This document shows positions 1-64,000 of a stretch of DNA of 64,000 bases, in pieces (position 1 is the first letter of the stretch; each line of letters opens with the position of its first letter). The DNA is taken from positions 1-64,000 of IMG/VR virus record IMGVR_UViG_3300031951_000003, one strand, 5' to 3'. The position numbers and the translations under genes were made by a program. The notes under the pieces were generated by a model, which was given only the letters and a program-made list of their open reading frames with translations, was not told the origin of the DNA and made no database searches.

Positions 1-347
1 GTTCCAGAAGTTCCTGACGAACCACTTGAACCAGATGAGCCAGATGTTCCACTTGTTCCAGATGAGCCAGATGTTCCACTTGTTCCAGATGAACCTGAAC
101 TTCCAGATGAACCTGATGTTCCGCTTGTTCCAGATGTTCCATTAGTTCCAGAAGTTCCTGACGAACCACTTGAACCAGATGAGCCAGATGTTCCACTTGT
201 TCCAGATGAGCCAGATGTTCCACTTGTTCCAGATGAACCTGAACTTCCAGATGAACCTGATGTTCCGCTTGTTCCAGATGTTCCATTAGTTCCAGAAGTT
301 CCTGACGAACCACTTGAACCAGATGAGCCAGATGTTCCACTTGTCCC
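1..347. repeat. 144-bp tandem repeat (about 2.4 copies) inside the collagen-like gene
   Basis: gttccagaagttcctgacgaacc starts at 1, 145 and 289. Confidence 0.85.
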
Positions 348-3300: not shown

Positions 3301-5417
3301 TCTGTTCCACTTGAGCCTGAAGAACCTGAGCTACCAGATGAACCTGATGTTCCACTAGTTCCTGATGAACCACTTGAACCTGAGGTTCCGCTAGTTCCCG
3401 AAGTGCCGTCTGTCCCACTTGAGCCAGATGAACCTGAAGTTCCACTAGTTCCCGAAGTGCCGTCTGTCCCACTTGTTCCAGAAGAACCTGATGTTCCACT
3501 TGTGCCTGAAGAACCACTTGAACCTGATGTTCCGTCTATTCCACTAGTTCCAGAAGAACCTGATGTTCCACTTGAGCCTGAAGAACCTGAGCTACCAGAT
3601 GAACCTGATGTTCCACTAGTTCCTGAAGAACCATCTGTTCCACTGGAACCAGATGAACCTGATGTTCCACTAGTTCCTGAAGAACCATCTGTTCCACTAG
3701 AACCAGATGAACCTGATGTTCCACTTGTGCCTGAAGAACCTGAGCTACCAGATGAACCCGATGTTCCACTAGTTCCTGAAGTTCCGTCCATTCCGCTAGT
3801 TCCTGAAGAACCACTTGAACCTGATGTTCCGCTAGTTCCCGAAGTGCCGTCTGTCCCACTTGAGCCAGATGAACCTGAAGTTCCACTAGTTCCCGAAGTG
3901 CCGTCTGTCCCACTTGTTCCAGAAGAACCTGATGTTCCACTTGTGCCTGAAGAACCACTTGAACCTGATGTCCCACTTGTTCCTGAAGTGCCGTCTATTC
4001 CGCTAGTTCCTGAACTACCGTCTGTTCCACTTGAGCCTGAAGAACCTGAGCTACCAGATGAACCTGATGTTCCACTAGTTCCTGAAGAACCATCTGTTCC
4101 ACTGGAACCAGATGAACCTGATGTTCCACTAGTTCCTGAAGAACCATCTGTTCCACTAGAACCAGATGAACCTGATGTTCCACTTGTGCCTGAAGAACCT
4201 GAGCTACCAGATGAACCCGATGTTCCACTAGTTCCTGAAGTTCCGTCCATTCCGCTAGTTCCTGAAGAACCACTTGAACCTGATGTTCCGCTAGTTCCTG
4301 AAGTTCCATCAATACCACTAGTTCCTGAAGTTCCATCAATACCACTAGTTCCTGAAGAACCTGATGTTCCATCGATACCACTTGTTCCAGAAGTTCCATC
4401 TAATCCGCTTGTTCCTGAAGTTCCATCAATACCACTAGTTCCTGAAGTTCCATCGATACCACTTGTTCCTGATGAACCTGATGTTCCATCGATACCACTT
4501 GTTCCTGATGAACCTGATGTTCCACTTGTTCCCGACGAACCACTTGAGCCTGAAGTTCCACTAATTCCTGAAGTTCCAGATGTTCCGTCTATTCCGCTAG
4601 TCCCAGATGTTCCGTCTATTCCGCTAGTCCCAGATGTTCCGTCTATTCCGCTAGTTCCTGATGTTCCATCTGTTCCACTGGAACCAGATGAACCTGATGT
4701 TCCACTAGTTCCTGAAGAACCATCTGTTCCACTAGAACCAGATGAACCTGAAGAACCTGATGTCCCATCAATTCCACTTGTTCCTGATGTCCCATCAATT
4801 CCACTAGTCCCTGATGTTCCGTCTAAACCGCTTGTTCCAGAAGAACCAGATGTTCCATCTAATCCACTTGTTCCTGATGTCCCATCAATTCCACTAGTTC
4901 CTGAGGTTCCATCAATTCCACTAGTTCCTGAGGTTCCATCTATGCCACTTGAACCAGACGTTCCGTCTACTCCACTTGTTCCTGAAGTGCCATCTATTCC
5001 AGATGTTCCACTCGAACCAGAAGTTCCGGATGTTCCGTCTAATCCGCTTGTTCCTGAAGTTCCATCAATTCCACTAGTTCCTGATGTTCCGTCTATTCCG
5101 CTAGTTCCAGAAGAGCCTGATGTTCCGTCTAAACCACTTGTTCCTGAAGTGCCATCTACCCCAGATGTTCCACTCGAACCAGAAGTTCCGTTGATACCAC
5201 TTGAGCCAGAAGTCCCGTCGATTCCTGATGAACCACTTGAACCAGATGTTCCACTAGTCCCTGATGTTCCTCCTGTTATACTTTCCGTCAAGGCTGAAAA
5301 CGTAATTTGCCCCGAAGTTCCTGATGTGCCTCCAGTATAGTCTGTAACTATATATAACCTATCGTCTGGGGCTGCCGATAGGACTATAGGTAAATCCGTT
5401 ATTCTTGTTGTTGCCAT
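1..5417 (-). CDS. Giant collagen-like (Gly-X-X, Ser/Thr-rich) fibre protein, >1805 aa, 3' end outside the window; absent from the ORF track
   Basis: ATG at 5417. Hand translation gives MATTRITDLPIVLSAAPDDRLYIVTDY... then GTS/GSS/GID/GLD/GTN triplets. The frame is the same at base 3-5 and stays open through the non-repeat inserts at about 2877-3020 and 1970-2230. Pro at every third residue of the + strand shadow ORFs implies Gly at every third codon on the - strand. TATTTAT lies 5 nt upstream of the ATG. Confidence 0.92.
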   Translation of the reverse strand, partial: MATTRITDLPIVLSAAPDDRLYIVTDYTGGTSGTSGQITFSALTESITGGTSGTSGTSGSSGSSGIDGTSGSSGINGTSGSSGTSGVDGTSGTSGLDGTSGSSGTSGIDGTSGTSGIDGTSGTSGLDGTSGTSGSSGTSGIDGTSGTSGVDGTSGSSGIDGTSGTSGIDGTSGTSGIDGTSGTSGLDGTSGSSGTSGLDGTSGTSGIDGTSGTSGIDGTSGSSGSSGSSGTDGSSGTSGTSGSSGSSGTDGTSGTSGIDGTSGTSGIDGTSGTSGIDGTSGTSGISGTSGSSGSSGTSGTSGSSGTSGIDGTSGSSGTSGIDGTSGTSGIDGTSGTSGLDGTSGTSGIDGTSGSSGTSGIDGTSGTSGIDGTSGTSGTSGSSGSSGTSGMDGTSGTSGTSGSSGSSGSSGTSGTSGSSGSSGTDGSSGTSGTSGSSGSSGTDGSSGTSGTSGSSGSSGSSGSSGTDGSSGTSGIDGTSGTSGTSGSSGSSGTSGTSGSSGTSGTDGTSGTSGTSGSSGSSGTDGTSGTSGTSGSSGSSGTSGMDGTSGTSGTSGSSGSSGSSGTSGTSGSSGSSGTDGSSGTSGTSGSSGSSGTDGSSGTSGTSGSSGSSGSSGSSGTSGSSGTSGIDGTSGSSGSSGTSGTSGSSGTSGTDGTSGTSGTSGSSGSSGTDGTSGTSGTSGSSGSSGTSGTSGSSGSSGSSGSSGTDGSSGTSGTSGSSGSSGSSGTSGTSGSSGSSGSSGSSGTSGSSGTSGIDGTSGSSGSSGTDGTSGSSGSSGLSGVNGTSGTSGSSGTSGSSGTSPFKGAYVSGTTYMDGDMVIDGLFSYQSTINNNTNEPSSLSGWILLNGLDGSSGSSGTSGSSGISGTDGTSGTSGTSGSSGSSGSSGTSGTSGSSGTSGSSGSSGSSGTSGTDGTSGTSGTSGSSGSSGSSGTSGTSGSSGTSGSSGSSGSSGTSGTNGTSGTSGTSGSSGSSGSSGTSGTSGSSGSSGTSGTSGSSGSSGSSGTSGTDGTSGTSGTSGSSGSSGSSGTSGTSGSSGTSGTSGSSGSSGSSGTSGTNGTSGTSGISAQYSGTSTTSIDLSTLTLSANTSLTTSTGLSYTIAQHLIVSNSLANHFHGDVVSYDSSTGALTLYVLEINGTGTFNSWTTNLDGATGGNGSSGTSGSSGTSGSSGTSGSSGTSGSSGSSGSSGTSGTSGSSGTSGSSGSSGSSGTSGTSGSSGTSGTSGSSGSSGSSGTSGTNGTSGTSGTSGSSGSSGSSGTSGTSGSSGTSGSSGSSGSSGTSGTNGTSGTSGTSGTSGSSGSSGSSGTSGTSGSSGTSGTSGSSGSSGSSGTSGTNGTSGTSGTSGSSGSSGSSGTSGTSGSSGSSGTSGTSGSSGSSGSSGTSGTNGTSGTSGTSGSSGSSGSSGTSGTSGSSGTSGSSGSSGSSGTSGTNGTSGTSGTSGSSGSSGSSGTSGTSGSSGTSGTSGSSGSSGSSGTSGTNGTSGTSGTSGSSGSSGSSGTSGTSGSSGTSGSSGSSGSSGTSGTNGTSGTSGTSGSSGSSGSSGTSGTSGSSGTSGTSGSSGSSGSSGTSGTNGTSGTSGTSGSSGSSGSSGTSGTSGSSGSSGTSGTSGSSGSSGSSGTDGTSGTSGTSGSSGSSGSSGTSGTSGSSGTSGTSGSSGSSGSSGTSGTNGTSGTSGSSGSSGSSGTSGTSGSSGTSGTSGSSGSSGSSGTSGTNGTSGTSGTSGSSGSSGSSGTSGTSGSSGTSGTSGSSGSSGSSGTSGTNGTSGTSGTSGSSGSSGSSGTSGTSGSSGTSGTSGSSGSSGSSGTSG
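3127..4298. repeat. Nested exact internal duplications in the collagen-like gene
   Basis: 3565-3839 = 4024-4298 (offset 459); 3385-3530 = 3826-3971 (offset 441); about 3127-3238 = 3505-3616 (offset 378). Confidence 0.8.
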
Positions 5418-5422
5418 AGCTT

Positions 5423-5429
5423 ATAAATA
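5423..5429 (-). promoter_or_regulatory. TATTTAT upstream element (putative phage late promoter)
   Basis: 5 nt before the collagen-like gene ATG. Confidence 0.65.
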
Positions 5430-5455: not shown

Positions 5456-6943
5456 TTAACATGGTTGCCATAGTCCTCCGACAACAAATCCATCACTATC
5501 TATTTGCCAATATCCTGTGAGAGAGTCGGTGCTGTTGGTATACCAATAATTATTCCCGTTGAAAGGCGTATTGAATGAACTGTCTGCAAAGAATCTCGTT
5601 GCACTATACCAATCATTCGATGGACTGTAAATTGTTTGACCCAACGTTTGTGGGTCTATACATATTGGTTGTGTTGTTTCCCCTGATGAAACTAAGAATG
5701 ATGTAATTTCTTGTTGAGCACCAATTGGGTCACCATTTTGAGCAATTAATTCTTGACCATCTTGAGTTATAATTAAAATCTCAAATACGGATGGAGTTGC
5801 TGTTGGTGAAGGAGTAAACGAAGGGGTTGGTGTATTAGTTTCTGTTGGAGTTGGTGTGTTAGTTTCTGTTGGAGTTGGTGTGTTAGTTTCTGTTGGAGTA
5901 GGAGTCGGAGATATCAAACATCCGTTAGGGTCCGAACTTGTGATTAGACCTGCTCCGCCTGTAACTCTATACCAAGCAACACCGTTGGAATAGTATCCGT
6001 CAGGTGCTGGTGTTGTAAGAGCCGAATCAGTATATAAAGTTTCCCCAATGTTAGGTCCAGGTCCATCTCCAGGTCCACTGTAGAAGTTAGTTGGTGATGA
6101 GTAAAAATTACCACACGATGTTAATGAGCTAGATAAATCATAACCTAATGAATATTCCCAATATGCTCTTGAAGCTGTAGGTGTTGTTGTCGGTGTTGCG
6201 GTTGGAGTTTCAGTTTGCGTAGGTGTTTGTGTTGGAGTCTCAGTATTTGTTGGGGTTGGAGTCTCTGTAGGCGTCTCGCTTGGTGTTACAGATGGTGTTG
6301 GTGTGTTAGTTTCAGTTGGAGTTTGAGTTGGTGTCTCACCAGGTGTTGCGGTAGGTGATTCTGTAGGTGTTTGTGATGGGGTTTCGGTTGGAGTTCCCGT
6401 CTGTGTTGGTGTAGGAGTTTCAGAAGTAGAAGGGGTCGGTGTAGGAGTTGTTGTTGGTGTCTCCGTTTGTGTTGGGGTCGGCGATTCTGTTGCAGTTGGT
6501 GTTTGACCAGGGCTTGCAGTTATACTTGGAGTTGGTGTTTGTGTCTGAGTTTCAGTTGGAGTTTGTGTTGGAGTCTCTGAAGTTGTTGGAGTCTGTGTTG
6601 TTGTTGGTGTTTCTGTAGGTGTAGAATTAGGGGTTCCTGTATTTGTTGGTGTAGGTGTAAACGTAGGTGTTACAGTAGGAGTAGGTGTAGGTGTAGGGGT
6701 AACGCATTCAAATGTAATAACAACTCCGTTGAACATTTCGGTTCTTGTCTGTGCAGAGGCATAAAGAGTTGCGGCTGAAAGGTAGGTCGAAGTCCCATAA
6801 TAGATATCGAATGGACCTAAGGCATTAGAATTCTGAGATAATCTTACAATGTAAGTGACACATCCCGTAACCGAGACCTGTTGCGTAACTACTGTATTAC
6901 AACCTTCAGCAGTATTGACACAAAAAATATTATAAAGGGACAT
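5456..6943 (-). CDS. Pro/Thr-rich stalk virion/adhesin protein with two related small aromatic- and Cys-containing domains
   Basis: ORF track 495 aa. Long (PT)n/TETPT tracts separate a small N-terminal domain from the domains ...[28 protein letters not shown]... and ...[19 protein letters not shown]...YWQIDSDG. Confidence 0.75.
5826..5900. repeat. 24-bp tandem repeat (3 copies) encoding PTPTETNT
   Basis: Unit gttggagttggtgtgttagtttct repeated directly. Confidence 0.8.
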
Positions 6944-6957
6944 CCGCGGTTTTTTTA

Positions 6958-6964
6958 ATAAATA
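6958..6964 (-). promoter_or_regulatory. TATTTAT upstream element
   Basis: 14 nt before ATG 6943. Confidence 0.65.
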
Positions 6965-7015
6965 CCACGATTATCTATTTGAATATCTCGAAACGAAAAA
7001 TTATTAAATACTTTA

Positions 7016-24575: not shown

Positions 24576-24582
24576 ATAAATA
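24576..24582 (-). promoter_or_regulatory. TATTTAT upstream element
   Basis: 5 nt before the gp25 ATG. Confidence 0.65.
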
Positions 24583-24782: not shown

Positions 24783-26645
24783 TTATACCAATGTAATCTC
24801 ACAAGCTCCTCCAGCACATGCTAGTTCTCCACTTAAATCAGTATCATCATCATTTTCAACAATTTTTGACAAATCAACATCTTTTAGCGTTTGTAATAGC
24901 TCTTCGTATTTTTCTTTTGTGCAATCTTCAAAAGGTGCTTGAATATATGTTCCACCATTGTAAGGTAAAACTGAAAGTCCATTATAATGTTCCTTATTTT
25001 CCCACATCCATTCACCAACTGCCGGCCATTCATGTTCACGAATAGAAACTGTTGCAGATACGTTATGTGCATTTGAACCATTTCTATGACCTGGTTTAAT
25101 CCATTCTTGTTGAACCTTTTTAACTCTTTCTAAGAGTTGAATGGGTGATTCATTTCTTAAGATAGACCCTTCAGGTGCCTTTTGTGGTATACTAATAACT
25201 GCAGTGTCATGTGGTCTGAAATATTCATCTTCAACAAGTTCAGGATGATTATTCTTTAGGTGTGTGTATATTGCTTCGTTTTTACCAACTCTAACTCTTC
25301 TGATATAGTAATCGTTATGCCATGCGTGAATACCTGATGAAGTTCCAAGTGTTAGTGAGGTAGTTCCTGCCGGTTTTACTGTTGTGGTTCTAGCCGACTT
25401 ATTAATACCAATTAGGGATGTTACTCTTTCATTTTCTTCTTTTACCACTTTAGCCGCTGATTTCATGTTGAGACCCATAACCGCTCCTGAGCCAATTCCT
25501 GTCATTGAGATACCAATAAGGGCATCTTTTTCTGTAGTTCTTTGCCAAATTGGTCTTAGATAATGGAAATCAGTATATCCTGCCTGAAGAGTGCCAATGA
25601 AAGAAGCAGCCTTAACTCTATCTTCGTAATCTTCTTGAGATACGACATTTGAAACGTTCACTTCAGTCAAGTTACAGAATTGGAAAGGACGAAGTGCAAT
25701 TTCACAACATGGGTTAGTTCCCCAATCTTTGTCATTACTTAAGTAGATACCAGGTTCGCCAGCACCACTTGCTTCGATTCTTTTCCAAAGGTCCATAAAA
25801 TAGTCCTTTGTAATTTTGTGTCTCATCAATACTGCTGAGTTATTAGCTCTTCCTCTTTGTGGATTTTGTTCCCACCAAGCACCACTTTTACAACCAATCA
25901 TATCTTCATCAGTTGCTGAGAATAAACAAATCAAAGCCGCTCTTCTGATACCACCAGCTAACACTGCGTCCGCAATGTGACATACCATGTCATGAACTTC
26001 GATTGGAGTTAATTTTTCTCCATCTTCTTTCGCTTCTAAAATACCTTCTAATTTGATTAGACATTCTTTCAGTGGTTGAGGACCAGGAGCCTTACCACCC
26101 GATGTTACAAGTCTAGCACCTTTTGGTCTGATATCACTATAATCAAACTCGATATGAGAACCACCAAAGAAGTATGACTTGACTAATACTTTAACAGCAT
26201 CAGCCCATCCCTCGATAGAGTCTGCAACTAACCATCTTCTACCTCTCTCTTTATTTGGTTTTCTAACCTCAGGTAACAACTCAACATGGTGTTTTTGAAC
26301 TGAGTATCCAACACCTGTTCCACCTAAGAGTAAGAACATGATTTCAGAAAATACTCTCCAATCATCAATCGGTGCAAATGCACAGTTGTAAATTCTGTTT
26401 GGAGAAATTTCAATGGGTTTACCTGCAAATTGCATTGACCTCATTGAAGGAAGAACTTGTTTTCTATAAACGTATTTATAGTTCTCTCTGATTTCTTCTT
26501 CTAGTTTGGGATACTTTTTGATATGCATCTCCATGTTTCTTGTGACTAATTCTTGCCACGTTTCTCTTCTCTTAAGTTCGGGAATATACTTAGCATACTT
26601 CATGTATACTGTAATCTCCGATAAAATCCTGTTCGAAATGTCCAT
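24783..26645 (-). CDS. nrdJ: Class II (adenosylcobalamin-dependent) ribonucleoside-triphosphate reductase, monomeric type
   Basis: Motifs NCAF, GGIRRAALI, TNPCCEI, CNLTEVN and TTVKPAGT. C-terminal LACAGGACEI redox Cys pair. No ATP cone. Confidence 0.93.
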   Translation of the reverse strand: MDISNRILSEITVYMKYAKYIPELKRRETWQELVTRNMEMHIKKYPKLEEEIRENYKYVYRKQVLPSMRSMQFAGKPIEISPNRIYNCAFAPIDDWRVFSEIMFLLLGGTGVGYSVQKHHVELLPEVRKPNKERGRRWLVADSIEGWADAVKVLVKSYFFGGSHIEFDYSDIRPKGARLVTSGGKAPGPQPLKECLIKLEGILEAKEDGEKLTPIEVHDMVCHIADAVLAGGIRRAALICLFSATDEDMIGCKSGAWWEQNPQRGRANNSAVLMRHKITKDYFMDLWKRIEASGAGEPGIYLSNDKDWGTNPCCEIALRPFQFCNLTEVNVSNVVSQEDYEDRVKAASFIGTLQAGYTDFHYLRPIWQRTTEKDALIGISMTGIGSGAVMGLNMKSAAKVVKEENERVTSLIGINKSARTTTVKPAGTTSLTLGTSSGIHAWHNDYYIRRVRVGKNEAIYTHLKNNHPELVEDEYFRPHDTAVISIPQKAPEGSILRNESPIQLLERVKKVQQEWIKPGHRNGSNAHNVSATVSIREHEWPAVGEWMWENKEHYNGLSVLPYNGGTYIQAPFEDCTKEKYEELLQTLKDVDLSKIVENDDDTDLSGELACAGGACEITLV

Positions 26646-56466: not shown

Positions 56467-56487
56467 AGTCAGCTGAACTTGTTTATA

Positions 56488-56516
56488 TTGATAAATACTT
56501 TTAAGTTTATTATATT
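56488..56516 (+). promoter_or_regulatory. sigma70-like promoter for the SET-SNF2 operon
   Basis: TTGATA, 17-nt spacer, TATATT, ending 8 nt before the ATG at 56525. Confidence 0.55.
56491..56497 (-). promoter_or_regulatory. TATTTAT upstream element
   Basis: 24 nt before the gp14-like ATG. Confidence 0.65.
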
Positions 56517-56524
56517 TAATCCAA

Positions 56525-56920
56525 ATGGAAATTCAAAGAAATACAAAACTACAAGTAAGAAAAAGTTCAATTCACGGTTGGGGGGTTTTCGCATGTGAAG
56601 ACATAAACGAGGGTGAGGTTATTGAAGAGTGTCCGATTCTTAGATTACCTGTTCAAAGAGGAGAAACAAACTACACCTTAATTGACTATACATTTGTATT
56701 TCCAAAAGGAGAGAATTGGCAAAACCACGTTATTGCTCTTGGATATGGTTCACTATATAACCATTCCGAAAACTATAACGCAACATGGGAAGACGATTTG
56801 GACAAAGACATTTTAAGATTTAAAGCAACAAAACCAATTTCGAAAGATGAGGAAGTCACAACTTATTATGGTGATGAAAGTTATTGGTCTGACGGTAGAA
56901 GTCACATTGAAGTAAAATGA
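56525..56920 (+). CDS. SET-domain protein (putative protein lysine methyltransferase)
   Basis: SSIHGWGVFA...I.EGEVIEE, GSLYNHS..YN, ATKPISKDEEVTTYYG. Confidence 0.9.
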   Translation: MEIQRNTKLQVRKSSIHGWGVFACEDINEGEVIEECPILRLPVQRGETNYTLIDYTFVFPKGENWQNHVIALGYGSLYNHSENYNATWEDDLDKDILRFKATKPISKDEEVTTYYGDESYWSDGRSHIEVK

Positions 56921-58677
56921 GCTTATCAGAAATATCACTCGAGTCAAAAGCACTAACACTTCTTGAACAATATGAGGGGTATAACAATTATATCTTGGAA
57001 CTACAAAGGAAATCCCAAGTAAATAAAAAATTCTACCCAACAAGAAGTCAATCAGAATACATAATCAATAACCACGACAAACAACCCAAAGTTGCCAAAA
57101 AGTGGGTAATTTTAGACGCATATTTTGCACAGAAATTAGCTGACGACAAGATGTATACTGAAATCCCACAAAAAGTCTGGGTTGAAAAACTTCTAGCGGA
57201 GAAGGACAAAGCTTATCATATTTGGGGAAAGATTTGGGACTCTGAACAACTACATGATTTTTGGTTACCCAAGGCTTCTATAATAAAAGACAACACCGTT
57301 AAAGACGTTGTCATCGATTTTGAAAAATATTCAAACAGACCCCCGTTAAACCATCAAAAAGAATCCATTCAGAAACTGGTTGAAAATAAAAAATATATTT
57401 TGGCCGATGATATGGGTTTGGGTAAAACAACCTCAACTATAATTGCAGCCTTAGAAACAGGGGCTAAAAAGGTTTTAATCATATGTCCCGCAACTTTGAA
57501 GATAAACTGGAAGCGTGAAATTGAAAATTACTCTGACAGGACAATATACATAGCGGAGGGTAAAAACTTTAGCACAGAACACGACTTTGTAATCATAAAC
57601 TACGACATTCTAAAAAACTTCCATGACCCTAAAAAGAAAGATGATTCGCAAATTCTTAGAGCCAATTTTGATTTGGTTGTTATTGATGAAGCACACTATA
57701 TCAAAAATGCTCAAGCACAAAGAACCAAACTTATAAACGACTTCATAAAAAAAATTGACAGACTTTGGTTATTAACAGGAACACCGATGACATCAAGACC
57801 AATTGATTATTATAATTTATTGAGTCTCGTAGATTCCCCTGTTGCCAAGAACTGGATGGCCTACGTCATAAGATATTGCAGTGGATATCAATTCAAGGTC
57901 GGAGCAAGGAAAGTATGGAACGTAATGGGTGCGTCTAATTTAGATGAACTAAGGGATAGAACCTCGAATACAATCCTAAGGAGATTGAAAGAAGACGTTT
58001 TGGATTTACCTGAAAAAATTATCACACCTGTTTATCTCAGACTCAAATCAAAGGACTATGAAGAACTCATGGGGGAATATTATAATTGGTATGATAAAAA
58101 CCCCGACGAGTCAAAATCGTTAACAGTTCAATTTTCAAAACTTACAAAAGTTAGACAAGTTATTGCCAACGAGAAAATATCTCAAACAATAGAACTTGCC
58201 GAAAACATATTAGAGCAGGACAAAAAAGTTATCATATTTTGTAACTTCACAGATTCACTAAATCAAATTGTTCAACATTTTGGAAAAACTGCCGTCAAAG
58301 TTGATGGGTCAATGACAAAACAAGATAGACAATTTAGTGTTGACCAATTTCAAGAAAATGATAAAATAAAAGTTTTTGTCGGTAACATAAAGGCTGCGGG
58401 TGTTGGACTTACTTTGACTTCCGCAGAAGCGGTTATTATGAACGACTTATCATTCCTACCATCGGACCACTCTCAGGCTGAAGATAGGGCATACAGATTT
58501 GGACAAAAAAATAATGTGTTAGTCTATTATCCAATATTTGAAAACACAATCGAAGGCGCGATATATGACATACTTAATAATAAGAAGCAAGTCATCGCGA
58601 CCGTTATGGGTGACAATCAAAACATCGGTGACACTGCCGAAGAAATTCTGAAAAGAATAAACGAATTACGCCCTTAA
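56917..58677 (+). CDS. SNF2-family helicase/translocase (SMARCAL1/HARP-like)
   Basis: LADDMGLGKT, IDEAH, LTGTP, LRRLKEDV, GVGLTLT, QAEDRAYRFGQ. ATGA overlap with the SET gene. Confidence 0.92.
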   Translation: MSLSEISLESKALTLLEQYEGYNNYILELQRKSQVNKKFYPTRSQSEYIINNHDKQPKVAKKWVILDAYFAQKLADDKMYTEIPQKVWVEKLLAEKDKAYHIWGKIWDSEQLHDFWLPKASIIKDNTVKDVVIDFEKYSNRPPLNHQKESIQKLVENKKYILADDMGLGKTTSTIIAALETGAKKVLIICPATLKINWKREIENYSDRTIYIAEGKNFSTEHDFVIINYDILKNFHDPKKKDDSQILRANFDLVVIDEAHYIKNAQAQRTKLINDFIKKIDRLWLLTGTPMTSRPIDYYNLLSLVDSPVAKNWMAYVIRYCSGYQFKVGARKVWNVMGASNLDELRDRTSNTILRRLKEDVLDLPEKIITPVYLRLKSKDYEELMGEYYNWYDKNPDESKSLTVQFSKLTKVRQVIANEKISQTIELAENILEQDKKVIIFCNFTDSLNQIVQHFGKTAVKVDGSMTKQDRQFSVDQFQENDKIKVFVGNIKAAGVGLTLTSAEAVIMNDLSFLPSDHSQAEDRAYRFGQKNNVLVYYPIFENTIEGAIYDILNNKKQVIATVMGDNQNIGDTAEEILKRINELRP

Positions 58678-58682
58678 CATAG

Positions 58683-58895
58683 ATGGAGAAAGTAACTAAT
58701 CACCAAGGAGTTGAATTGAGAGTTGGTGATAGAATTAAAATTATATCAGACAAATTACATTCAAAATTACTAGCTAACGTTGACCTAAATGAAGAGGTTG
58801 TCATAACAAGTTTTTCAGAAAACGGAAAAATTATATATCATCATAATACATTAGCCCTACCAACCAACAGTGACATTTATGTTAAAATAAATTAA
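58683..58895 (+). CDS. Small hypothetical protein (SH3/KOW-like)
   Basis: 70-aa ORF containing LRVGDRIKI. Starts 5 nt after the SNF2 stop. Confidence 0.55.
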   Translation: MEKVTNHQGVELRVGDRIKIISDKLHSKLLANVDLNEEVVITSFSENGKIIYHHNTLALPTNSDIYVKIN

Positions 58896-58925
58896 AGTCA
58901 ATCAAACCTTAAAACAATTCTGAGT

Positions 58926-58932
58926 TATTTAT
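58926..58932 (+). promoter_or_regulatory. TATTTAT upstream element
   Basis: 22 nt before the SOD ATG, on the + strand like the gene. Confidence 0.65.
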
Positions 58933-58954
58933 ATAAAACGAATAACTCGCCAAT

Positions 58955-60493
58955 ATGAAAAAAATAGAAGAAAGAATTCAACAAATTGAAAAACAAATTA
59001 CCGAAAACCATATCGAAACAGAAAAACAATTGTTGATTACAGAAATGAAAAAAATTGGAATAGAAAAACTACCCTATTCTTATTCAGCCCTCAAAGGATT
59101 CATCGACGCAGAAACGATGAATTTCCACTACAACAAACACTATAAGGGATATGTAGATAAATTAAATGCCGCCCTGTCAAAGAAAAAACATGGAGATTTA
59201 GACTTAGAAAAAATTGTCAAAAACATTAGTCGATACGACCAAGTAGTAAGGAACAACGCTGGAGGAGCATTCAATCACGCACTTTTTTGGAATATGTTGT
59301 CTCCAACACCAAAAAAATTAACAGGGGAATTGTATAAAAAAATTACCAAAGAATACGGTAGTTTCAATCTATTCAAAAAGAAATTTGAAACTGTTGCAAA
59401 GGATAGATTTGGCTCAGGTTGGGTATGGTTAATTTTAACCTCAAAAAATACTTTGAAAATAATGTCGACACCAAATCAAGACAATCCACTTATGAATGTT
59501 ATCGAAGGTGGAGGTTTCCCTCTATTAGGTTTGGACCTTTGGGAACACGCCTACTATTTGAAATACAGAAATAAGAGAGACGAATACATTTCAAATTTTT
59601 GGAAGGTGGTCAATTGGGATTTTGTTCAGAAACTTTATGAAATGAAAGTTGAAACAAAACTACTAGAGTCGAACAAATTTCAAGGAATAATTACTGAATC
59701 AAAAGAACCACAATTCTGTAATCCAAAAGAAGTATTGTTCTATAGAGACTTGATTAATAATTACGCAATCAAAAAAAGATATCAGGAGGGAGTATCCTAC
59801 GTTCTAAAAAAAGTATTTTCACATTTTTGGGTTGAGGGTAATACTGAAGAGATGTCAGGATTTTATGGTGTAGAATCACCCGAGGGTAGGTCTATACTCA
59901 ATAACCTTAATACAAATTTCAATACATTTTGTTTATTGGTAAAAGCAGTAAACAAACAGATTGAATTAATTGGAAGGTCAGAAAAGAAGTTTGATTTTTC
60001 AAAAAAAGAAAAAAGAACTCTAAAGGAAACAACTAGATTTATTTCAGCATTGGACCACTTCAGAAACGAAATCTTTACAGAGAATAACGAAGACTTTATC
60101 AATATAATCAAAGTCCTTAAAAAACTTTGGGATAGGGGTCAAAAGTCTGAAGACAACGCAATTAAAAAAATAGAAGACTATTTTGATGGTAATGCTAAAA
60201 TTGAAAAGATTGGTTCACATGGTGGAAAACAAGACGCCTTCAAAGGTATTGATGTAAATGTGATTTTAGATGGAAAAAAGTTTTCTGCACAGGTTAAACC
60301 ATTCTCTAATGTTTCAATAATCGAGGACAGAGTTAAACTTTTGGATACAGGAAATGTTAAGCATTACGAAGTCGATTGGTATATTTTTATTAATCCTAAA
60401 ACAAATAAGATACTTATATTCAAAAACGACCCTATAAGTGATAAAAACCAATATGTCTTCAACGTTAGTTCACTACTACACGAAATAGAATAA
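58955..60493 (+). CDS. sod: Fe/Mn superoxide dismutase fused to a C-terminal PD-(D/E)xK-like domain
   Basis: SOD motifs LPYSYSAL, HYNKHYKGY, NAGGAFNH, RFGSGW, NQDNP, LDLWEHAYYLKY. C-terminal GQKSED / GIDV / AQVKP. Confidence 0.88.
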   Translation: MKKIEERIQQIEKQITENHIETEKQLLITEMKKIGIEKLPYSYSALKGFIDAETMNFHYNKHYKGYVDKLNAALSKKKHGDLDLEKIVKNISRYDQVVRNNAGGAFNHALFWNMLSPTPKKLTGELYKKITKEYGSFNLFKKKFETVAKDRFGSGWVWLILTSKNTLKIMSTPNQDNPLMNVIEGGGFPLLGLDLWEHAYYLKYRNKRDEYISNFWKVVNWDFVQKLYEMKVETKLLESNKFQGIITESKEPQFCNPKEVLFYRDLINNYAIKKRYQEGVSYVLKKVFSHFWVEGNTEEMSGFYGVESPEGRSILNNLNTNFNTFCLLVKAVNKQIELIGRSEKKFDFSKKEKRTLKETTRFISALDHFRNEIFTENNEDFINIIKVLKKLWDRGQKSEDNAIKKIEDYFDGNAKIEKIGSHGGKQDAFKGIDVNVILDGKKFSAQVKPFSNVSIIEDRVKLLDTGNVKHYEVDWYIFINPKTNKILIFKNDPISDKNQYVFNVSSLLHEIE

Positions 60494-60499
60494 TAAAGA

Positions 60500-60506
60500 T
60501 ATTTAT
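60500..60506 (+). promoter_or_regulatory. TATTTAT upstream element
   Basis: 5 nt before the gp13-like ATG, on the + strand like the gene. Confidence 0.65.
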
Positions 60507-60511
60507 TTGAT

Positions 60512-61639
60512 ATGGCAGCACTACCAGAACCAGAAAGAAGTAAAATTTATACAAGAGTCAAACACTTGTTGGGAGCACCCTTAAGAAGTGTAGAATTAGA
60601 AGACGAAATGATGGACTCGCTAATGGAATTATCTATTGGTGATTATGAAGAATATATTCTACAATGGCTAATCGATTCACAATGGGTTAACTTAGTAAAC
60701 CTCAATATGAATGAAAAGTCTGTTGCCAGAGCTTTGGTTACAAGGACAATGGACTTCGAACAACAATTTGCATATTCGTATTCTAAGATTGTTGGACTTC
60801 AGACCGTAGGACCATGGGTCTTGAAGAAAGATTATTTCATAATTGAAAAGAATGTTCAGACATACGAAATACCAGCCAACAGAGAAGTCAATGAACTTCT
60901 TTGGTTTAGTAATCAGGCTTGGACAGCATTCGGACTTGGAGGTCTTGGTGGATTTGGATTCGGTGGTATAGGTTTGGGTGCCAATGAAGCAGGATACGCT
61001 CAGATGGGATACCAAGGTTCTTATTTTATGATGTCTGGTTTTGATTACCTCATCAGAATGCAAGAAGCAAATATCTTGAATAGAATTCTCGGTGGTTCTA
61101 TGACATATAGGATTACCGCATTACCTGATGGTAAAAAGTTGATACACTTGATGAATACCCCTGGTGGTAAATTTAACTGGGCTAATTTCAACATGTATGC
61201 TGGTAAAGCGGTTTGGTATTGGTATTATGATGTAACACCAGACAGTAGAGCTGATTGTCTTAAAAACAATCCTGACATTATCAAACTACCGACTGACGTT
61301 CCTCTTGAATCCTTGAGTTGGGAAGATATCAATGTTCCTGGACAACAATGGATAAGAAGATGGTTTACAGCATATTGTAAAGAAACCTTAGCAAGAGTGA
61401 GAGGTAAATACAGTGGGAATCTTAAGACACCTGATTCTGAAATTACAATGGATTACACCAGTCTTTTAACTGAAGCCAAGGATGAAAAATCTAAACTGAT
61501 GGAAGAATTGACGGGCGCTGAAGGATGGCTTACAAGACTAAGACCTGAAAAGGTTATGGAAAGAGAAGCACAAATTGCTGAAAATTTAAATAAACAAATG
61601 AAATTCAGAGCAATGCCTCGTCAAATCTACGTAATCTAA
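60512..61639 (+). CDS. Neck protein, T4 gp13-like (head-tail adaptor)
   Basis: RVKHLLGAPLRSVELEDE, WIRRWFTAYCKETLARVRGKY, AKDEKSKL. Confidence 0.78.
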   Translation: MAALPEPERSKIYTRVKHLLGAPLRSVELEDEMMDSLMELSIGDYEEYILQWLIDSQWVNLVNLNMNEKSVARALVTRTMDFEQQFAYSYSKIVGLQTVGPWVLKKDYFIIEKNVQTYEIPANREVNELLWFSNQAWTAFGLGGLGGFGFGGIGLGANEAGYAQMGYQGSYFMMSGFDYLIRMQEANILNRILGGSMTYRITALPDGKKLIHLMNTPGGKFNWANFNMYAGKAVWYWYYDVTPDSRADCLKNNPDIIKLPTDVPLESLSWEDINVPGQQWIRRWFTAYCKETLARVRGKYSGNLKTPDSEITMDYTSLLTEAKDEKSKLMEELTGAEGWLTRLRPEKVMEREAQIAENLNKQMKFRAMPRQIYVI

Positions 61640-61640
61640 T

Positions 61641-61976
61641 ATGGCAATAGTAAAATCAATCCCATCCAAAAGAATTATTAATGGTCATGCAATCAATACA
61701 TCTGAACTTTCAGTTGTATCCGAATTGGATTATAGAACCAACGGTGAATTTTGTATAATTGTTAGAGGAATCCCACAATCATTTTTAGTCTTAGATTCAA
61801 AAACAACAGACCATGTTGTAGTCAAAGCTATGACTATGGTAACAGTAAGACCCGATGTCGGAAAAATTGACGAGGAATGGGACGAAATTGTATTAGATAA
61901 GTTTGCCTGTGTAGAATTCCAATACGTTGGAGGTAATTGGTATATTCTTTCTTCAGACGGTCTTAAGCAATCCTAA
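61641..61976 (+). CDS. Small beta-rich hypothetical (probably structural) protein
   Basis: 111-aa ORF starting 1 nt after the gp13-like stop. Confidence 0.65.
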   Translation: MAIVKSIPSKRIINGHAINTSELSVVSELDYRTNGEFCIIVRGIPQSFLVLDSKTTDHVVVKAMTMVTVRPDVGKIDEEWDEIVLDKFACVEFQYVGGNWYILSSDGLKQS

Positions 61977-64000
61977 TTTAGTTTCCCAATTTTCTTCGGC
62001 TAATTCATACATGTAATTAGGGTCAAGTCCACGTTTTTCCCAATAAGATAGTTCATCCGATGTTATATCTAAAACATCTTCTTGAAGTTTATCTTGGTCT
62101 CCATCTTCGAATGGCATACCGTTGATTAGTTCACATTGTTCTCCCGTAAAAATTCCCCTTTCTTCAGGATTCGTAACAAGTAGTTGGTCACGAACGTCTT
62201 GTTTATAAACAACAAGTAAAGGTTCAATTCTTTTGTTGAAAGTTACAATTGCTCTTGGAACATTATATTCACCTGTCAGATTGGGGTTATTTTCTAATAT
62301 GTTTGCATCCAACATGTAACAATTAATCTGAACACTGTCTCCCTTTTTTTGGACATCACCATGAGAGGCTTTGACACCATTATTAACATACATAATAACA
62401 TCTCCCAAGTTTACACCTATCCCCGTTTGAAGTGCAAGTTCCATGTGTGCCATACGGGACATTGTATTCCCTGCTTTAGTCTTTTGGGTTAATCTTTTTT
62501 TATAATCCTCGAGTGTTAACTTAACTTTCGCTCTTTGTGCAATCTTTGAAAGGGGAATTTGTTGGTTGAATATTTTTTGAAGATACTCATAATAATATTC
62601 CACGAAGTCTTTACCCTTACCCTCCAAAAGTAATTTGATACCTTTATCCAAAAACTCCTCGATATACAATGGAAGTTTTTTTGATTTGATGGAATTGCCA
62701 GTCAATTTAATCTTTCCTTTGGCGTCCATGACCGCATAATTTTTTCTGGCAAGATTAATACATGAAGGCCACACACCATCAGTATCGAGAGCCATCTCAC
62801 CCCTCATGAATATGTCATTGTATTCTGCAACGTCCGCTTCAGGACCTTTATAAACTTTTCCCGCCTTTACCTTCCAATTCAACCCACGACCAACATAGTG
62901 ATGACTTTCCACATCATCGGGACTGGAGAAGTTTACACCGTCTGTATCCATTACAAGTGGGACATAACCCTTAGACATAAAAAATTTAATCATTTGTCTC
63001 AGATATTGTCTACCTGTGCAAGTAATCTGTTCCCCCATATACATGTCACCCCAAGCAAAAACTTGTGGAGCAGACAAAGCACCAAACATGGAGTTGATGA
63101 ATATTTTGATGGGCAATTGTTTGTTTGAATATGATGCGGACTTTTGTGGGTCAGACTTTTCAAACTCTTCCGCAAGTTGTTTGTAACGAATACGTGTGTC
63201 ACGGAAATACTTCAACATTCCTTTCATCGCACCTGTCACATCACAATCAGGAAATACATCATGCACAAGCTGAATAGAGGGGTATAGAGAGGAGAAGTCG
63301 AGCTTTAATACATTCTTACTATAACCAACCTTAAGTAGTCGAGAAAGACCTCCTACGAAGTCTGTCTTCGATTGTTTGGCAGGGATTGCCAGTCCGTGTT
63401 TGTATGACCAAGCAAGCATCAGCATTTTCCAAAGAGTCGCAGTTCCCATGGTTGATACTCTTTCGTAAGTCGTAGGAATCATAGATGCAAGTAGAAATGA
63501 CGCTTGGTTAAATTCTTTATCCACAGCCAAGGTTTCTTCCAAGTCATCATCAAGATATCTCTCAACAAGATTGTCACCAGTAGTTTTGATATAAATGTCA
63601 TTTCTTTTTTCACATACCTCATCAATCTTTGGGTCCAAACCAACCTTCTTGTAATTACCGTTTTTAATATTTAACCAATATTCTTCCTTAGCGGCATAAA
63701 ATTTTCCAATGTCCGTGTGTTCGATATAAACACGGTCAGGAGCCTCTTTATTAATAAACTTTGTGATATACTTCAAACCAGCCGCCTTGATATTTGAATT
63801 GATGGCTTGAGCTCTTCGAACAGCATGAATTATATCGATTACATTATATCCCCAAATTGATGTTTGAAGAAAATCTTCGACTTCATTTGCTAATTTGAGA
63901 ATCGTATCTTTTCTTGTGTATGAGTGTTGGGGATGTAAGGATTTAATCGCCTTCCTCATATCTAAACCAAGTCTTTGACCTCTTTCGAATATCCAGTGCC
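61953..64000 (-). CDS. Family B DNA polymerase (5' end outside the window)
   Basis: LDFSSLYPSI, KIFINSMFG, MDTDG, ExoIII YLDDD. The frame stays open upstream of the track start (HWIFERGQRLGLDM). Confidence 0.93.
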   Translation of the reverse strand, partial: HWIFERGQRLGLDMRKAIKSLHPQHSYTRKDTILKLANEVEDFLQTSIWGYNVIDIIHAVRRAQAINSNIKAAGLKYITKFINKEAPDRVYIEHTDIGKFYAAKEEYWLNIKNGNYKKVGLDPKIDEVCEKRNDIYIKTTGDNLVERYLDDDLEETLAVDKEFNQASFLLASMIPTTYERVSTMGTATLWKMLMLAWSYKHGLAIPAKQSKTDFVGGLSRLLKVGYSKNVLKLDFSSLYPSIQLVHDVFPDCDVTGAMKGMLKYFRDTRIRYKQLAEEFEKSDPQKSASYSNKQLPIKIFINSMFGALSAPQVFAWGDMYMGEQITCTGRQYLRQMIKFFMSKGYVPLVMDTDGVNFSSPDDVESHHYVGRGLNWKVKAGKVYKGPEADVAEYNDIFMRGEMALDTDGVWPSCINLARKNYAVMDAKGKIKLTGNSIKSKKLPLYIEEFLDKGIKLLLEGKGKDFVEYYYEYLQKIFNQQIPLSKIAQRAKVKLTLEDYKKRLTQKTKAGNTMSRMAHMELALQTGIGVNLGDVIMYVNNGVKASHGDVQKKGDSVQINCYMLDANILENNPNLTGEYNVPRAIVTFNKRIEPLLVVYKQDVRDQLLVTNPEERGIFTGEQCELINGMPFEDGDQDKLQEDVLDITSDELSYWEKRGLDPNYMYELAEENWETKLGLLKTV

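What the first reader, a model, noticed from the sequence alone, without database searches (positions are those of the whole stretch)
58922..58948. Late element buried in the left arm of a hairpin that covers the SOD translation start region
Seen: GAGTTATT-(11 nt)-AATAACTC is an 8-bp inverted repeat ending 6 nt before the ATG at 58955, and TATTTAT (58926-58932) overlaps its left arm. The gene lies downstream of the sigma70-type SET-SNF2 operon. Established: T4 genes e, soc, 49 and I-TevI are silenced on long early transcripts by a hairpin, and become translatable when a late promoter starts inside the hairpin. Inference: the same early-off / late-on switch operates here.
Basis: partly seen in the sequence, partly recalled or inferred. 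Interest (0 to 1): 0.6.

Follow-up and report, generated by a model that had tools for sequence, protein, structure and literature searches.

The report
Promoter buried in conserved RNA hairpin
Just before a superoxide-dismutase fusion gene of an uncultured giant phage sits a small RNA hairpin, preserved across dozens of related phages, whose first half holds the gene's own promoter; this matches a phage T4 design that keeps a gene untranslated until its own promoter fires, here in a phage whose host seems not to use ribosome-binding sites.

Summary
GAGTTATT (58922-58929) and AATAACTC (58941-58948) form a stem that ends 6 nt before the ATG at 58955, and TATTTAT (58926-58932) overlaps the left arm. 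An 8-bp inverted repeat alone is not unusual (34 in the window, about 19 expected by chance). The case rests on comparison. 32 of 36 distinct relatives keep the stem. Two pairs swap GC for AU. In the nine core pairs, 35 cells are G.U on the sense strand and none are A.C. Loop length varies from 3 to 12 nt. So this is a selected sense-strand RNA helix. TATTTAT is the phage's main upstream signal (106 upstream segments against 4.4 expected in the complete 321-kb relative). It heads mostly virion genes. About 50 genes have it 4-6 nt before the ATG, which predicts leaderless mRNAs. By that geometry SOD's own transcript starts in the loop and lacks the left arm. Read-through RNA from a conserved host-type SET-SNF2 promoter carries the whole hairpin. 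The T4-like switch is therefore plausible but unproven. The AUG and positions -1 to -6 stay unpaired, the phage uses no Shine-Dalgarno sites, and no transcript data exist. Three other genes show similar promoter-spanning hairpins.

The parts
58922..58930 (+). 5' arm of the RNA hairpin (GAGUUAUU plus U58930, which pairs with G58940)
   Evidence: Kept in 32 of 36 distinct relatives, with GC/AU swaps at the 2nd and 3rd pairs.
58926..58932 (+). TATTTAT, a -7/-10-like promoter element of the phage's main (virion-gene) promoter class. Here the preceding base is T, a minority variant.
   Evidence: Invariant as TTATTTAT, 17-23 nt before the ATG, in all 36 distinct relatives, including those without the hairpin. 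106 upstream segments against 4.4 expected in the complete genome.
58931..58939 (+). Hairpin loop. The start of the gene's own transcript is predicted at about 58937-58938.
   Evidence: Inferred from the 4-6 nt motif-to-ATG peak in about 50 genes and the 4-5 nt -7-element-to-TSS spacing in F. johnsoniae (PMC6847099). Not mapped.
58940..58948 (+). 3' arm of the hairpin (G + AAUAACUC), at positions -15 to -7 of the SOD leader
   Evidence: Every one-sided change in relatives is A<->G opposite an invariant U.
58955..60493 (+). 512-aa fusion gene: helical N-terminus, Fe/Mn SOD (aa 36-226), helical middle, and a PD-(D/E)xK nuclease-like C-terminal domain (aa ~394-512)
   Evidence: Pfam Sod_Fe_N and Sod_Fe_C. 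Atlas leads. Invariant D427, D433, Q446, K448. VIA Z 5-6.6 to Hjc, splicing endonuclease, NhoI, I-Ssp6803I, DpnI, RecU and PvuII.
56488..56518 (+). Host-type (Bacteroidota -33/-7) promoter of the SET-SNF2 operon: TTG (56488-56490), N20, TATATTTA (56511-56518), 6 nt before the ATG at 56525
   Evidence: TTG-N20-TATATTT(A/T/C) is conserved in relatives while the spacer drifts. The sigma-70 scan flags the same place.
56525..58677 (+). SET-domain gene (56525-56920) and SNF2-family helicase gene (56917-58677), overlapping by 4 nt. This is the upstream unit whose read-through RNA would carry the whole hairpin.
   Evidence: Pfam SET, SNF2-rel_dom and Helicase_C. No terminator-like site on the + strand between 56525 and 58955.
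58683..58895 (+). 70-aa ORF found only in the window's subclade. In most relatives the SNF2 stop lies 9-15 nt before the hairpin.
   Evidence: The hairpin stays 4-7 nt from the SOD ATG whether or not this ORF is present.
60500..60506 (+). TATTTAT 5 nt before the ATG of the next gene (60512-61639): predicted leaderless, same promoter class
   Evidence: Weak adaptor-like PHROG match.
6945..6969 (-). A second promoter-spanning hairpin inside the window: CGUGGU, then the rest of TATTTAT and an A-tract, then ACCGCG. Its 3' arm ends 1 nt before the ATG of gene 5456-6943.
   Evidence: -11.9 kcal/mol, z -3.2. Relatives covary, e.g. CGGG/CCCG. Coordinates.

Best explanation
The window is part of a ~321-kb jumbo phage from lake metagenomes. 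Its host probably belongs to the Bacteroidota. The DNA at 58922-58948 encodes a sense-strand RNA hairpin directly 5' of the start codon of a SOD-nuclease-like fusion gene. The 5' arm overlaps TATTTAT, the phage's own -7/-10-like promoter element, which heads mostly virion genes and may be read by host RNA polymerase carrying the phage-encoded sigma factor. Transcription from this promoter should start 4-5 nt after the motif, inside the loop, so the gene's own mRNA has a ~17-nt unstructured leader without the 5' arm. RNA that reads through from the conserved host-type SET-SNF2 promoter contains both arms and folds the hairpin over -7 to -33. In a host that ignores Shine-Dalgarno sites and relies on an open, A-rich leader, this should lower SOD-fusion translation from read-through RNA and allow it from the promoter-proximal RNA. 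That is the same logic as T4 genes e and I-TevI. Shown: the helix, its conservation and sense-strand covariation, the motif's genome-wide placement, the upstream promoter's conservation and the absence of a terminator. Inferred: the TSS position, the early and late timing, the role of the sigma factor and any effect on translation.
For: Helix and selection: 32 of 36 distinct leaders keep a stem of 8-13 bp, -5 to -12 kcal/mol. 93% of cells are paired against 33-48% when partners are slid. Two pairs swap GC/AU with no unpaired cell. The core pairs show 35 G.U-type and 0 A.C-type cells. Loops range from 3 to 12 nt. The hairpin stays 4-7 nt from the ATG, while its distance to the upstream stop varies from 9 to 26 nt and a 70-aa ORF comes and goes. 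Motif as promoter: 106 upstream segments against 4.4 expected. It occurs in all four divergent intergenic regions checked. It often follows canonical terminators. There is a spacing peak of 4-6 nt to the ATG in about 50 genes, matching the F. johnsoniae -7-to-TSS spacing. The motif is kept even where the hairpin is lost. Class: annotated motif genes are 8 virion and 2 other; motif-free genes are 3 virion (all operon-internal) and 12 other. Upstream unit: conserved TTG-N20-TATATTT and no terminator. Energetics: opening -20..+12 costs 4.9-11.7 kcal/mol on long RNA against 0.2-5.2 on short RNA in 18 of 18 representatives. Host context: no SD use; structure over -20..+20 and adenines at -3, -6, -12 and -13 tune initiation in F. 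johnsoniae. Recurrence: three more motif sites have conserved hairpins reaching or pairing the AUG. Precedent: PMC3014915.
Against: The AUG and -1 to -6 are unpaired, so opening -6..+12 costs about the same on long and short RNA in most lineages. The window's own stem is the weak end of the range (-6.1 kcal/mol). SOD's motif has T at -1, which at most 8 of 106 sites share. One nested clade lost the canonical stem with SNF2 still directly upstream. Its predicted replacement pairing is only modestly better than shuffles (z about -2) or not significant. Genome-wide, TSS-bridging complementarity is only modestly enriched (8 of 102 at <= -10 kcal/mol against 1.6% shuffled and 3.5% non-motif). It is also not confined to genes lacking an upstream terminator. 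At two of the other hairpin sites the upstream genes may themselves belong to motif-driven units, so 'early-off' may not be the general meaning. There is no TSS, RNA or ribosome data.
Confidence: 0.5

Rival explanations
1. The hairpin is an intercistronic stability element. It blocks 3'-to-5' exonucleases and so protects the upstream SNF2 (or 70-aa ORF) message after processing. The overlap with the SOD promoter comes from tight gene packing.
For: In most relatives the stem begins 9-15 nt after the SNF2 stop codon. It must form on read-through RNA. No U-tract follows, so it would not terminate transcription.
Against: Its distance to the SOD ATG is fixed at 4-7 nt while its distance to the upstream stop varies. 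It stays with SOD when the 70-aa ORF is present. The 5' arm always includes the promoter motif. The three other promoter-spanning hairpins pair or abut the AUG itself. The clade that lost it keeps SNF2 upstream with no replacement 3' stem.
Confidence: 0.15
2. The hairpin is a translational coupling device. Ribosomes terminating on the upstream gene melt the 5' arm, so on polycistronic RNA SOD is translated only when the upstream gene is.
For: Where the stop is 9-12 nt upstream, a terminating ribosome's footprint would reach the first bases of the 5' arm (inference).
Against: In the window the stop at 58895 is 26 nt before the stem, out of reach. In L052 and L159 the upstream context is different. 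Coupling does not explain why the promoter motif is always inside the structure.
Confidence: 0.08
3. The pairing masks the AU-rich promoter sequence (UUAUUUAU) on read-through RNA, protecting long transcripts from endonuclease attack at a single-stranded AU-rich site. It does not control translation.
For: The constant partner in every variant is the motif segment, and its pairing partner differs between clades.
Against: About 100 other copies of the motif are not masked. The whole genome is AU-rich. In all four cases the 3' partner is the initiation region, which the masking idea does not predict.
Confidence: 0.07
4. The inverted repeat is a DNA operator for a dimeric regulator that controls the SOD promoter.
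For: A palindrome overlapping a promoter is a classic operator layout. Paired changes in both arms could follow a change in protein specificity.
Against: There are 35 G.T-type and 0 A.C-type departures in the core, and these break DNA symmetry but keep RNA pairing. Arm spacing varies from 3 to 12 nt. The arm sequence does not recur in the genome beyond chance (13 against 8 for the control).
Confidence: 0.05
5. It is a chance inverted repeat in AT-rich DNA with no function.
For: About 19 such 8-bp repeats are expected by chance in 64 kb, and 34 are seen.
Against: Conservation with compensatory and wobble changes across a clade whose SOD proteins differ by up to 29%.
Confidence: 0.02

Closest known systems
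Phage T4 gene e (lysozyme) and I-TevI, with soc and gene 49: an inhibitory RNA structure on early read-through transcripts, with a late promoter in the DNA that encodes its 5' strand
   Same: A gene downstream of an earlier unit with no terminator between. A stage-specific promoter inside or overlapping the 5' strand, so promoter-proximal RNA cannot fold. The structure is conserved in related phages (PMC3014915). The product here probably includes a nuclease-like domain, as for gp49, I-TevI, mobE and segB.
   Different: In T4 the structure sequesters the Shine-Dalgarno site and/or the AUG. Here it covers -7 to -33 and leaves the AUG free, and the phage has no SD sites. The promoter motif is TATTTAT, not TATAAATA. 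The host is probably Bacteroidota. Nothing here has been tested by experiment.
Aeromonas phage Aeh1 mobE hairpin that sequesters the ribosome-binding site (cited in PMC3014915)
   Same: A small hairpin at the initiation region of a phage nuclease gene that limits translation from upstream-initiated RNA.
   Different: It acts by sequestering the ribosome-binding site. No SD exists here.
Bacteroidota primary-sigma promoters (-33 TTG / -7 TAnnTTTG, with 4-5 nt from the -7 element to the TSS)
   Same: The SET-SNF2 promoter fits TTG-N20-TATATTT(A/T/C). Nine full matches lie in upstream regions against 1.65 expected. The phage motif TATTTAT shows the same short spacing to the predicted start.
   Different: TATTTAT lacks the terminal TTTG and needs no visible -33 element. 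It is probably read by a different specificity factor (inference). A phage sigma gene exists.
Phage N4 virion-RNAP hairpin promoters
   Same: A promoter associated with a hairpin-forming inverted repeat.
   Different: N4 hairpins are a defining DNA feature of every promoter in that class, with short stems and 3-nt loops. Here only a few of about 100 motif sites have a hairpin, loops vary from 3 to 12 nt, and the wobble pattern points to RNA.
Rho-independent terminators
   Same: A stem-loop between two genes on the same strand.
   Different: AU-rich stem and no U-tract. The scan does not call it. The phage's real terminators are GC-rich stems with T-runs.

Membership tests
T4-type RNA-structure / late-promoter translational switch (e, soc, 49, I-TevI) | The target gene lies downstream of, and on the same strand as, an earlier transcription unit with no terminator between | tested here: met
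   Conserved host-type promoter before SET. No terminator-like site between 56525 and 58955 on the + strand. 'Earlier' timing is inferred from promoter type and gene content.
T4-type RNA-structure / late-promoter translational switch (e, soc, 49, I-TevI) | [quoted passage not shown] | tested here: met
   TATTTAT at 58926-58932 overlaps the 5' arm at 58922-58930. In relatives the whole motif is inside the arm. The motif's promoter identity rests on genome-wide placement.
T4-type RNA-structure / late-promoter translational switch (e, soc, 49, I-TevI) | Transcripts from that promoter start inside the structure and lack its 5' strand | not testable with these tools
   Predicted TSS at 58937-58938 from spacing rules. 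No RNA run holds the locus.
T4-type RNA-structure / late-promoter translational switch (e, soc, 49, I-TevI) | The structure sequesters the Shine-Dalgarno sequence and/or the start codon | tested here: not met
   The AUG and -1 to -6 are unpaired in the window and most relatives. The phage has no SD usage. The cost of opening -6..+12 is about equal on long and short RNA. This feature is met at two other genes of the same genome, where the AUG is paired.
T4-type RNA-structure / late-promoter translational switch (e, soc, 49, I-TevI) | The structure is conserved in related phages | tested here: met
   32 of 36 distinct leaders, with covariation and a wobble pattern confined to the sense strand.
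T4-type RNA-structure / late-promoter translational switch (e, soc, 49, I-TevI) | Translation is repressed on long transcripts and active on promoter-proximal ones | not testable with these tools
   Only computed opening energies are available.
Rho-independent terminator | A GC-rich stem followed directly by a U-tract | tested here: not met
   2-3 GC pairs, followed by GCCAAUAUGAAAAAAA. Absent from the terminator scan.
N4-type hairpin promoter | A hairpin is present at all promoters of the class, with fixed short stem and loop geometry | tested here: not met
   Most of the 22 motif sites in this contig show no unusually stable fold around the motif, and only 4 have z of -2.7 or lower. Only 8 of 102 have TSS-bridging complementarity at <= -10 kcal/mol. 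Loop is 3-12 nt.
Dimeric-regulator DNA operator | Symmetric half-sites at fixed spacing, with changes that keep DNA symmetry | tested here: not met
   Variable spacing. 35 asymmetric G.T-type cells against 0 A.C-type.
Bacteroidota -33/-7 promoter (for the upstream SET-SNF2 unit) | TTG, then 19-21 nt, then TAnnTTTG, 4-5 nt before the TSS | tested here: inconclusive
   TTG-N20-TATATTTA at 56488-56518 is conserved in relatives, but the last base is A, T or C where the consensus has G. The TSS is not mapped.

The most novel reading that the evidence does not exclude
Promoter-spanning hairpins are a recurring device in this clade of Bacteroidota jumbo phages, seen at four or more genes. They make translation depend on which promoter produced the RNA. 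At the SOD fusion gene, a helix over -7 to -33 alone, with the AUG left free, is enough to block SD-blind ribosomes. If so, this would be a natural, evolution-tested probe of how ribosomes that ignore Shine-Dalgarno sites choose start codons. It would sit beside an unusually large set of about 50 leaderless phage mRNAs made from a new -7-like promoter class.
Probability: 0.3. Interest if true: 0.7.

Novelty: new variant of a known kind. Interest (0 to 1): 0.5.

Why it matters
If the switch works, the T4 design of hiding a gene on early RNA and starting the late RNA inside the hairpin is not confined to enterobacterial T-even phages. It would have arisen independently in a jumbo phage with different host transcription and translation signals. 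It would also show that, in hosts without Shine-Dalgarno recognition, structure placed only upstream of the start codon can gate initiation, which bears on the open question of how Bacteroidia ribosomes select start sites. In practical terms, the analysis defines a new phage promoter motif (TATTTAT, 4-6 nt before the ATG), predicts about 50 leaderless mRNAs, and provides four conserved hairpins as ready-made reporter constructs. The product, a SOD joined to a probable PD-(D/E)xK nuclease-like domain, is an unusual protein whose timing may need tight control.

Tried and rejected
1. Megablast of 56500-61700 against annotated phages found no match. tblastn with the SOD protein found only the SOD domain in unrelated phages.
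2. The hairpin arm GAGTTATT does not recur in the genome beyond chance (13 against 8 for the control), so there is no sign of a repeated operator.
3. RNA evidence: the run search listed three tiny lake metatranscriptomes holding next to none of the sampled words. Laying them on 5,301 letters gave zero coverage. None was listed that holds the stretch, which says nothing about expression.
4. Classic sigma-70 consensus: only 14 matches at 11/12 or better in 321 kb, 3 of them intergenic. In the local scan, 40 found against 34 in shuffles. I dropped this as the early promoter class in favour of the Bacteroidota -33/-7 type.
5. My first occlusion measure (MFE of long minus short leader) was confounded by upstream terminators. 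I replaced it with a duplex measure, which shows only modest enrichment.
6. The idea that hairpins occur only where no terminator precedes the promoter is not supported: 5 of 60 co-directional genes without a terminator, 3 of 15 with a terminator and 2 of 27 divergent.
7. Fourth site: 92.7% paired against 35-58% slid, but 66 of 500 shuffles reach the observed covariation, so it is not significant alone.
8. The replacement pairing in the L160 clade has z about -2, and L159's is not significant. I treat this as suggestive only.
9. Foldseek against the PDB returned only SOD chains. Pfam and PHROGs gave nothing for the C-terminal half.
10. A full-text search for TATTTAT with 'promoter' and 'phage' found no paper.
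11. The large protein searches, complex prediction and alternative genetic codes were neither needed nor used.

Full report
WHAT IS IN THE SEQUENCE. GAGTTATT is at 58922-58929, the 11-nt spacer at 58930-58940, AATAACTC at 58941-58948, six more bases follow, and the ATG is at 58955. TATTTAT is at 58926-58932. Folded as RNA, the stem gains a U.G pair (9 bp, 9-nt loop) at -6.1 kcal/mol, with z -4.8 against shuffles. The ORF 58955-60493 encodes 512 aa with Fe/Mn SOD domains at aa 36-226. The bare observation is not statistically striking. The window holds 34 perfect 8-bp inverted repeats with 3-12 nt loops, against 18.6 +/- 5.5 in Markov resamples. TATTTAT is not over-represented overall (27 against 22.4). 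The phrase 'covers the translation start region' overstates it: the helix spans -7 to -33, and the AUG and -1 to -6 are free.

WHAT THE GENOME IS. The window lies in a 105.6-kb IMG/VR viral contig that is about 35% complete. Relatives include complete genomes of about 320 kb. One of these, G001 (321,283 bp, direct terminal repeats), has the same coordinates as the window over 1-64000. It is a myovirus-like jumbo phage with sheath, tube, baseplate, portal and collagen-like fibres. Its genes carry no Shine-Dalgarno signal: 22 of 386 have an SD-like tetramer at -18..-4, against 28 in a control window. Bacteroidota-type promoters (TTG-N19-21-TAnnTTTG) are enriched upstream of genes, 9 against 1.65 expected. 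The classic sigma-70 consensus is not enriched. A Bacteroidota host is therefore likely; this is an inference.

THE MOTIF IS A REAL PROMOTER-LIKE SIGNAL. In the 105.6-kb contig, 22 of 50 TATTTAT copies are intergenic, on the sense strand and within 64 nt of a start, in the 4.4% of the DNA that is intergenic. In G001 the motif occurs in 106 upstream segments against 4.4 expected, and it is by far the strongest upstream word. It sits in all four divergent intergenic regions I checked, where a promoter must exist. It often follows a canonical GC-rich terminator and T-run directly. Its distance to the ATG has two peaks: about 50 genes at 4-6 nt and about 30 at 12-17 nt. [quoted passage not shown] So the first peak predicts leaderless mRNAs. 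For SOD, at 22 nt, it predicts a start at about 58937-58938, inside the loop. Among annotated genes, those with the motif are 8 virion and 2 other, and those without are 3 virion (all operon-internal) and 12 other. 'Late' is thus a fair but indirect label. G001 encodes one sigma-70-family factor and no detectable RNAP beta-prime, so a phage sigma reading TATTTAT is possible but untested. SOD's copy has T at the preceding position, which at most 8 of 106 sites share.

THE HAIRPIN IS UNDER SELECTION AS SENSE-STRAND RNA. The SOD fusion gene occurs in hundreds of viral contigs, at 71-100% identity among the loci kept. There are 36 distinct leaders, and all keep TTATTTAT 17-23 nt before the ATG. 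32 keep the stem, usually longer than in the window (11-13 bp, -8 to -12 kcal/mol), with the whole motif inside the 5' arm. On a 24-sequence alignment, 93% of cells are paired against 33-48% when partners are slid. Two pairs alternate GC with AU and have no unpaired cell. In the nine core pairs there are 35 G.U-type cells on the + strand and no A.C-type cells. Loops range from 3 to 12 nt. This pattern fits an RNA helix in the sense transcript. It does not fit a DNA operator or an antisense RNA. The stem keeps a fixed distance to the SOD ATG (4-7 nt). Its distance to the upstream stop varies, and a 70-aa ORF is present only in the window's subclade.

THE UPSTREAM UNIT. SET (56525-56920) and SNF2 (56917-58677) are preceded by TTG-N20-TATATTTA (56488-56518). 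This is conserved in relatives while the spacer drifts. No terminator-like site lies between it and SOD. Read-through RNA carrying both arms is therefore expected, and the selection on pairing requires that such RNA exists.

HOW IT PROBABLY WORKS. Opening -20..+12 costs 4.9-11.7 kcal/mol on a read-through RNA and 0.2-5.2 on an RNA that starts at the predicted TSS. This holds in all 18 representatives tested. Opening -6..+12 costs about the same on both in most. In F. johnsoniae, initiation is tuned by structure over -20..+20 and by adenines at -3, -6, -12 and -13, and bS1 is positioned near -12 to -15 (PMC6847099). So a helix over -7 to -33 could depress initiation, but this is an inference. 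The design matches T4 gene e and I-TevI, where long early RNAs fold an inhibitory structure and late promoters lie in the DNA encoding its 5' strand (PMC3014915).

RECURRENCE AND LIMITS. Three more motif sites in the same genome sit in unusually stable hairpins. At the 502-aa gene at 98771 in G001 coordinates, the first bases of the motif pair with the AUG. This holds in 39 of 44 distinct relatives, and the serine codon varies between UCA and UCG, both of which pair. At gene 5456-6943, a GC-rich stem encloses the motif, ends 1 nt before the AUG, and covaries. At the 125-aa gene at 64782, the AUG pairs with an upstream CAU. There is one compensatory swap and several G.U variants, but the covariation is not significant on its own. 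Genome-wide the feature is a minority one: 8 of 102 motif genes at <= -10 kcal/mol, against 1.6% in shuffles and 3.5% in non-motif genes. It is not limited to genes without an upstream terminator. One nested, long-branched clade (L158-L164) lost the canonical SOD stem. A predicted replacement pairing of the motif with AUGAAUAA is only modestly better than chance.

THE PROTEIN. The C-terminal domain (aa ~394-512) matches PD-(D/E)xK nucleases in the top VIA ranks: Hjc, splicing endonuclease, NhoI, I-Ssp6803I, DpnI, RecU and PvuII. The Z-scores of 5-6.6 are modest. Atlas leads and the invariant D427, D433, Q446 and K448 agree. A nuclease-like fusion partner would give a reason for tight timing, as with T4 gp49 and I-TevI, but this is speculation.

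VERDICT. The structure is real and selected. The promoter assignment is strong. The switch is the best available explanation at about 0.5 confidence. It works like the T4 switch, but it fails one defining feature (sequestering the SD or AUG), so I class it as a new variant and not as a member. No transcript data were available.

Noticed in passing
G001 (complete relative; same coordinates as the window over 1-64000), genome-wide; in the window e.g. 24576-24582(-), 60500-60506(+), 5423-5429(-): About 50 of 386 genes have TATTTAT exactly 4-6 nt before the ATG. With the 4-5 nt -7-to-TSS spacing of Bacteroidota, this predicts an unusually large set of leaderless phage mRNAs. A second peak lies at 12-17 nt.
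   Followed up: partly
window 58955-60493 (aa ~394-512 of the product): The SOD is fused to a conserved C-terminal domain with a probable PD-(D/E)xK nuclease fold (VIA Z 5-6.6 to Hjc, NhoI, I-Ssp6803I, DpnI, RecU and PvuII; invariant D427, D433, Q446, K448). The 512-aa architecture is kept in all the relatives retrieved.
   Followed up: partly
window 6945-6969 (- strand); G001 98746-98783 (+); G001 65156-65182 (-): Three more conserved hairpins span a TATTTAT promoter element and reach or pair the start codon of the next gene. At G001 98771 the AUG pairs with the first three bases of the motif in 39 of 44 distinct relatives.
   Followed up: yes
window 56467-56524: Divergent promoter region. 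The - strand TATTTAT (56491-56497) lies directly beside the + strand TTG (56488-56490), inside the spacer of the host-type SET promoter. The two promoter classes therefore overlap physically and might compete.
   Followed up: partly
window 58683-58895: A 70-aa ORF with no family match sits between SNF2 and SOD only in the window's subclade (window, L019-L028, L113). Elsewhere the SNF2 stop lies 9-15 nt before the hairpin.
   Followed up: partly
window 56525-58677: A SET-domain protein gene overlaps an SNF2-family helicase gene by 4 nt (ATGA). Such chromatin-type enzymes are an unusual pairing for a phage, and the pair is conserved in many relatives.
   Followed up: no
window 1-5417: A collagen-like tail-fibre gene (1805+ aa, running off the window end) has 44-48% GC against about 35% elsewhere, and long ORFs are open in several frames on both strands because of the repeat composition.
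   Followed up: partly
G001 291706-292503 (- strand): A 265-aa sigma-70-family factor is encoded inside an operon. No RNAP beta-prime domain was detected anywhere in the 321-kb genome, so the phage probably redirects host RNA polymerase.
   Followed up: partly
G001 76727-76733 (-) and 76747-76753 (+): Two TATTTAT elements lie back to back, 13 nt apart, in a 52-nt divergent intergenic region, one for each flanking gene.
   Followed up: no
window 24783-26645 and 61953-64000: Ribonucleotide reductase and DNA polymerase genes have a TATTTAT copy far from the start (53 and 64 nt). These are the only non-virion annotated genes with the motif, which could mean a second promoter or a different timing class.
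   Followed up: no
window 5456-6943; G001 69804-71822, 72788-76717 and others: Several large paralogous genes match phrog_15511 (unknown function). Most are headed by TATTTAT, so they are probably virion proteins.
   Followed up: no
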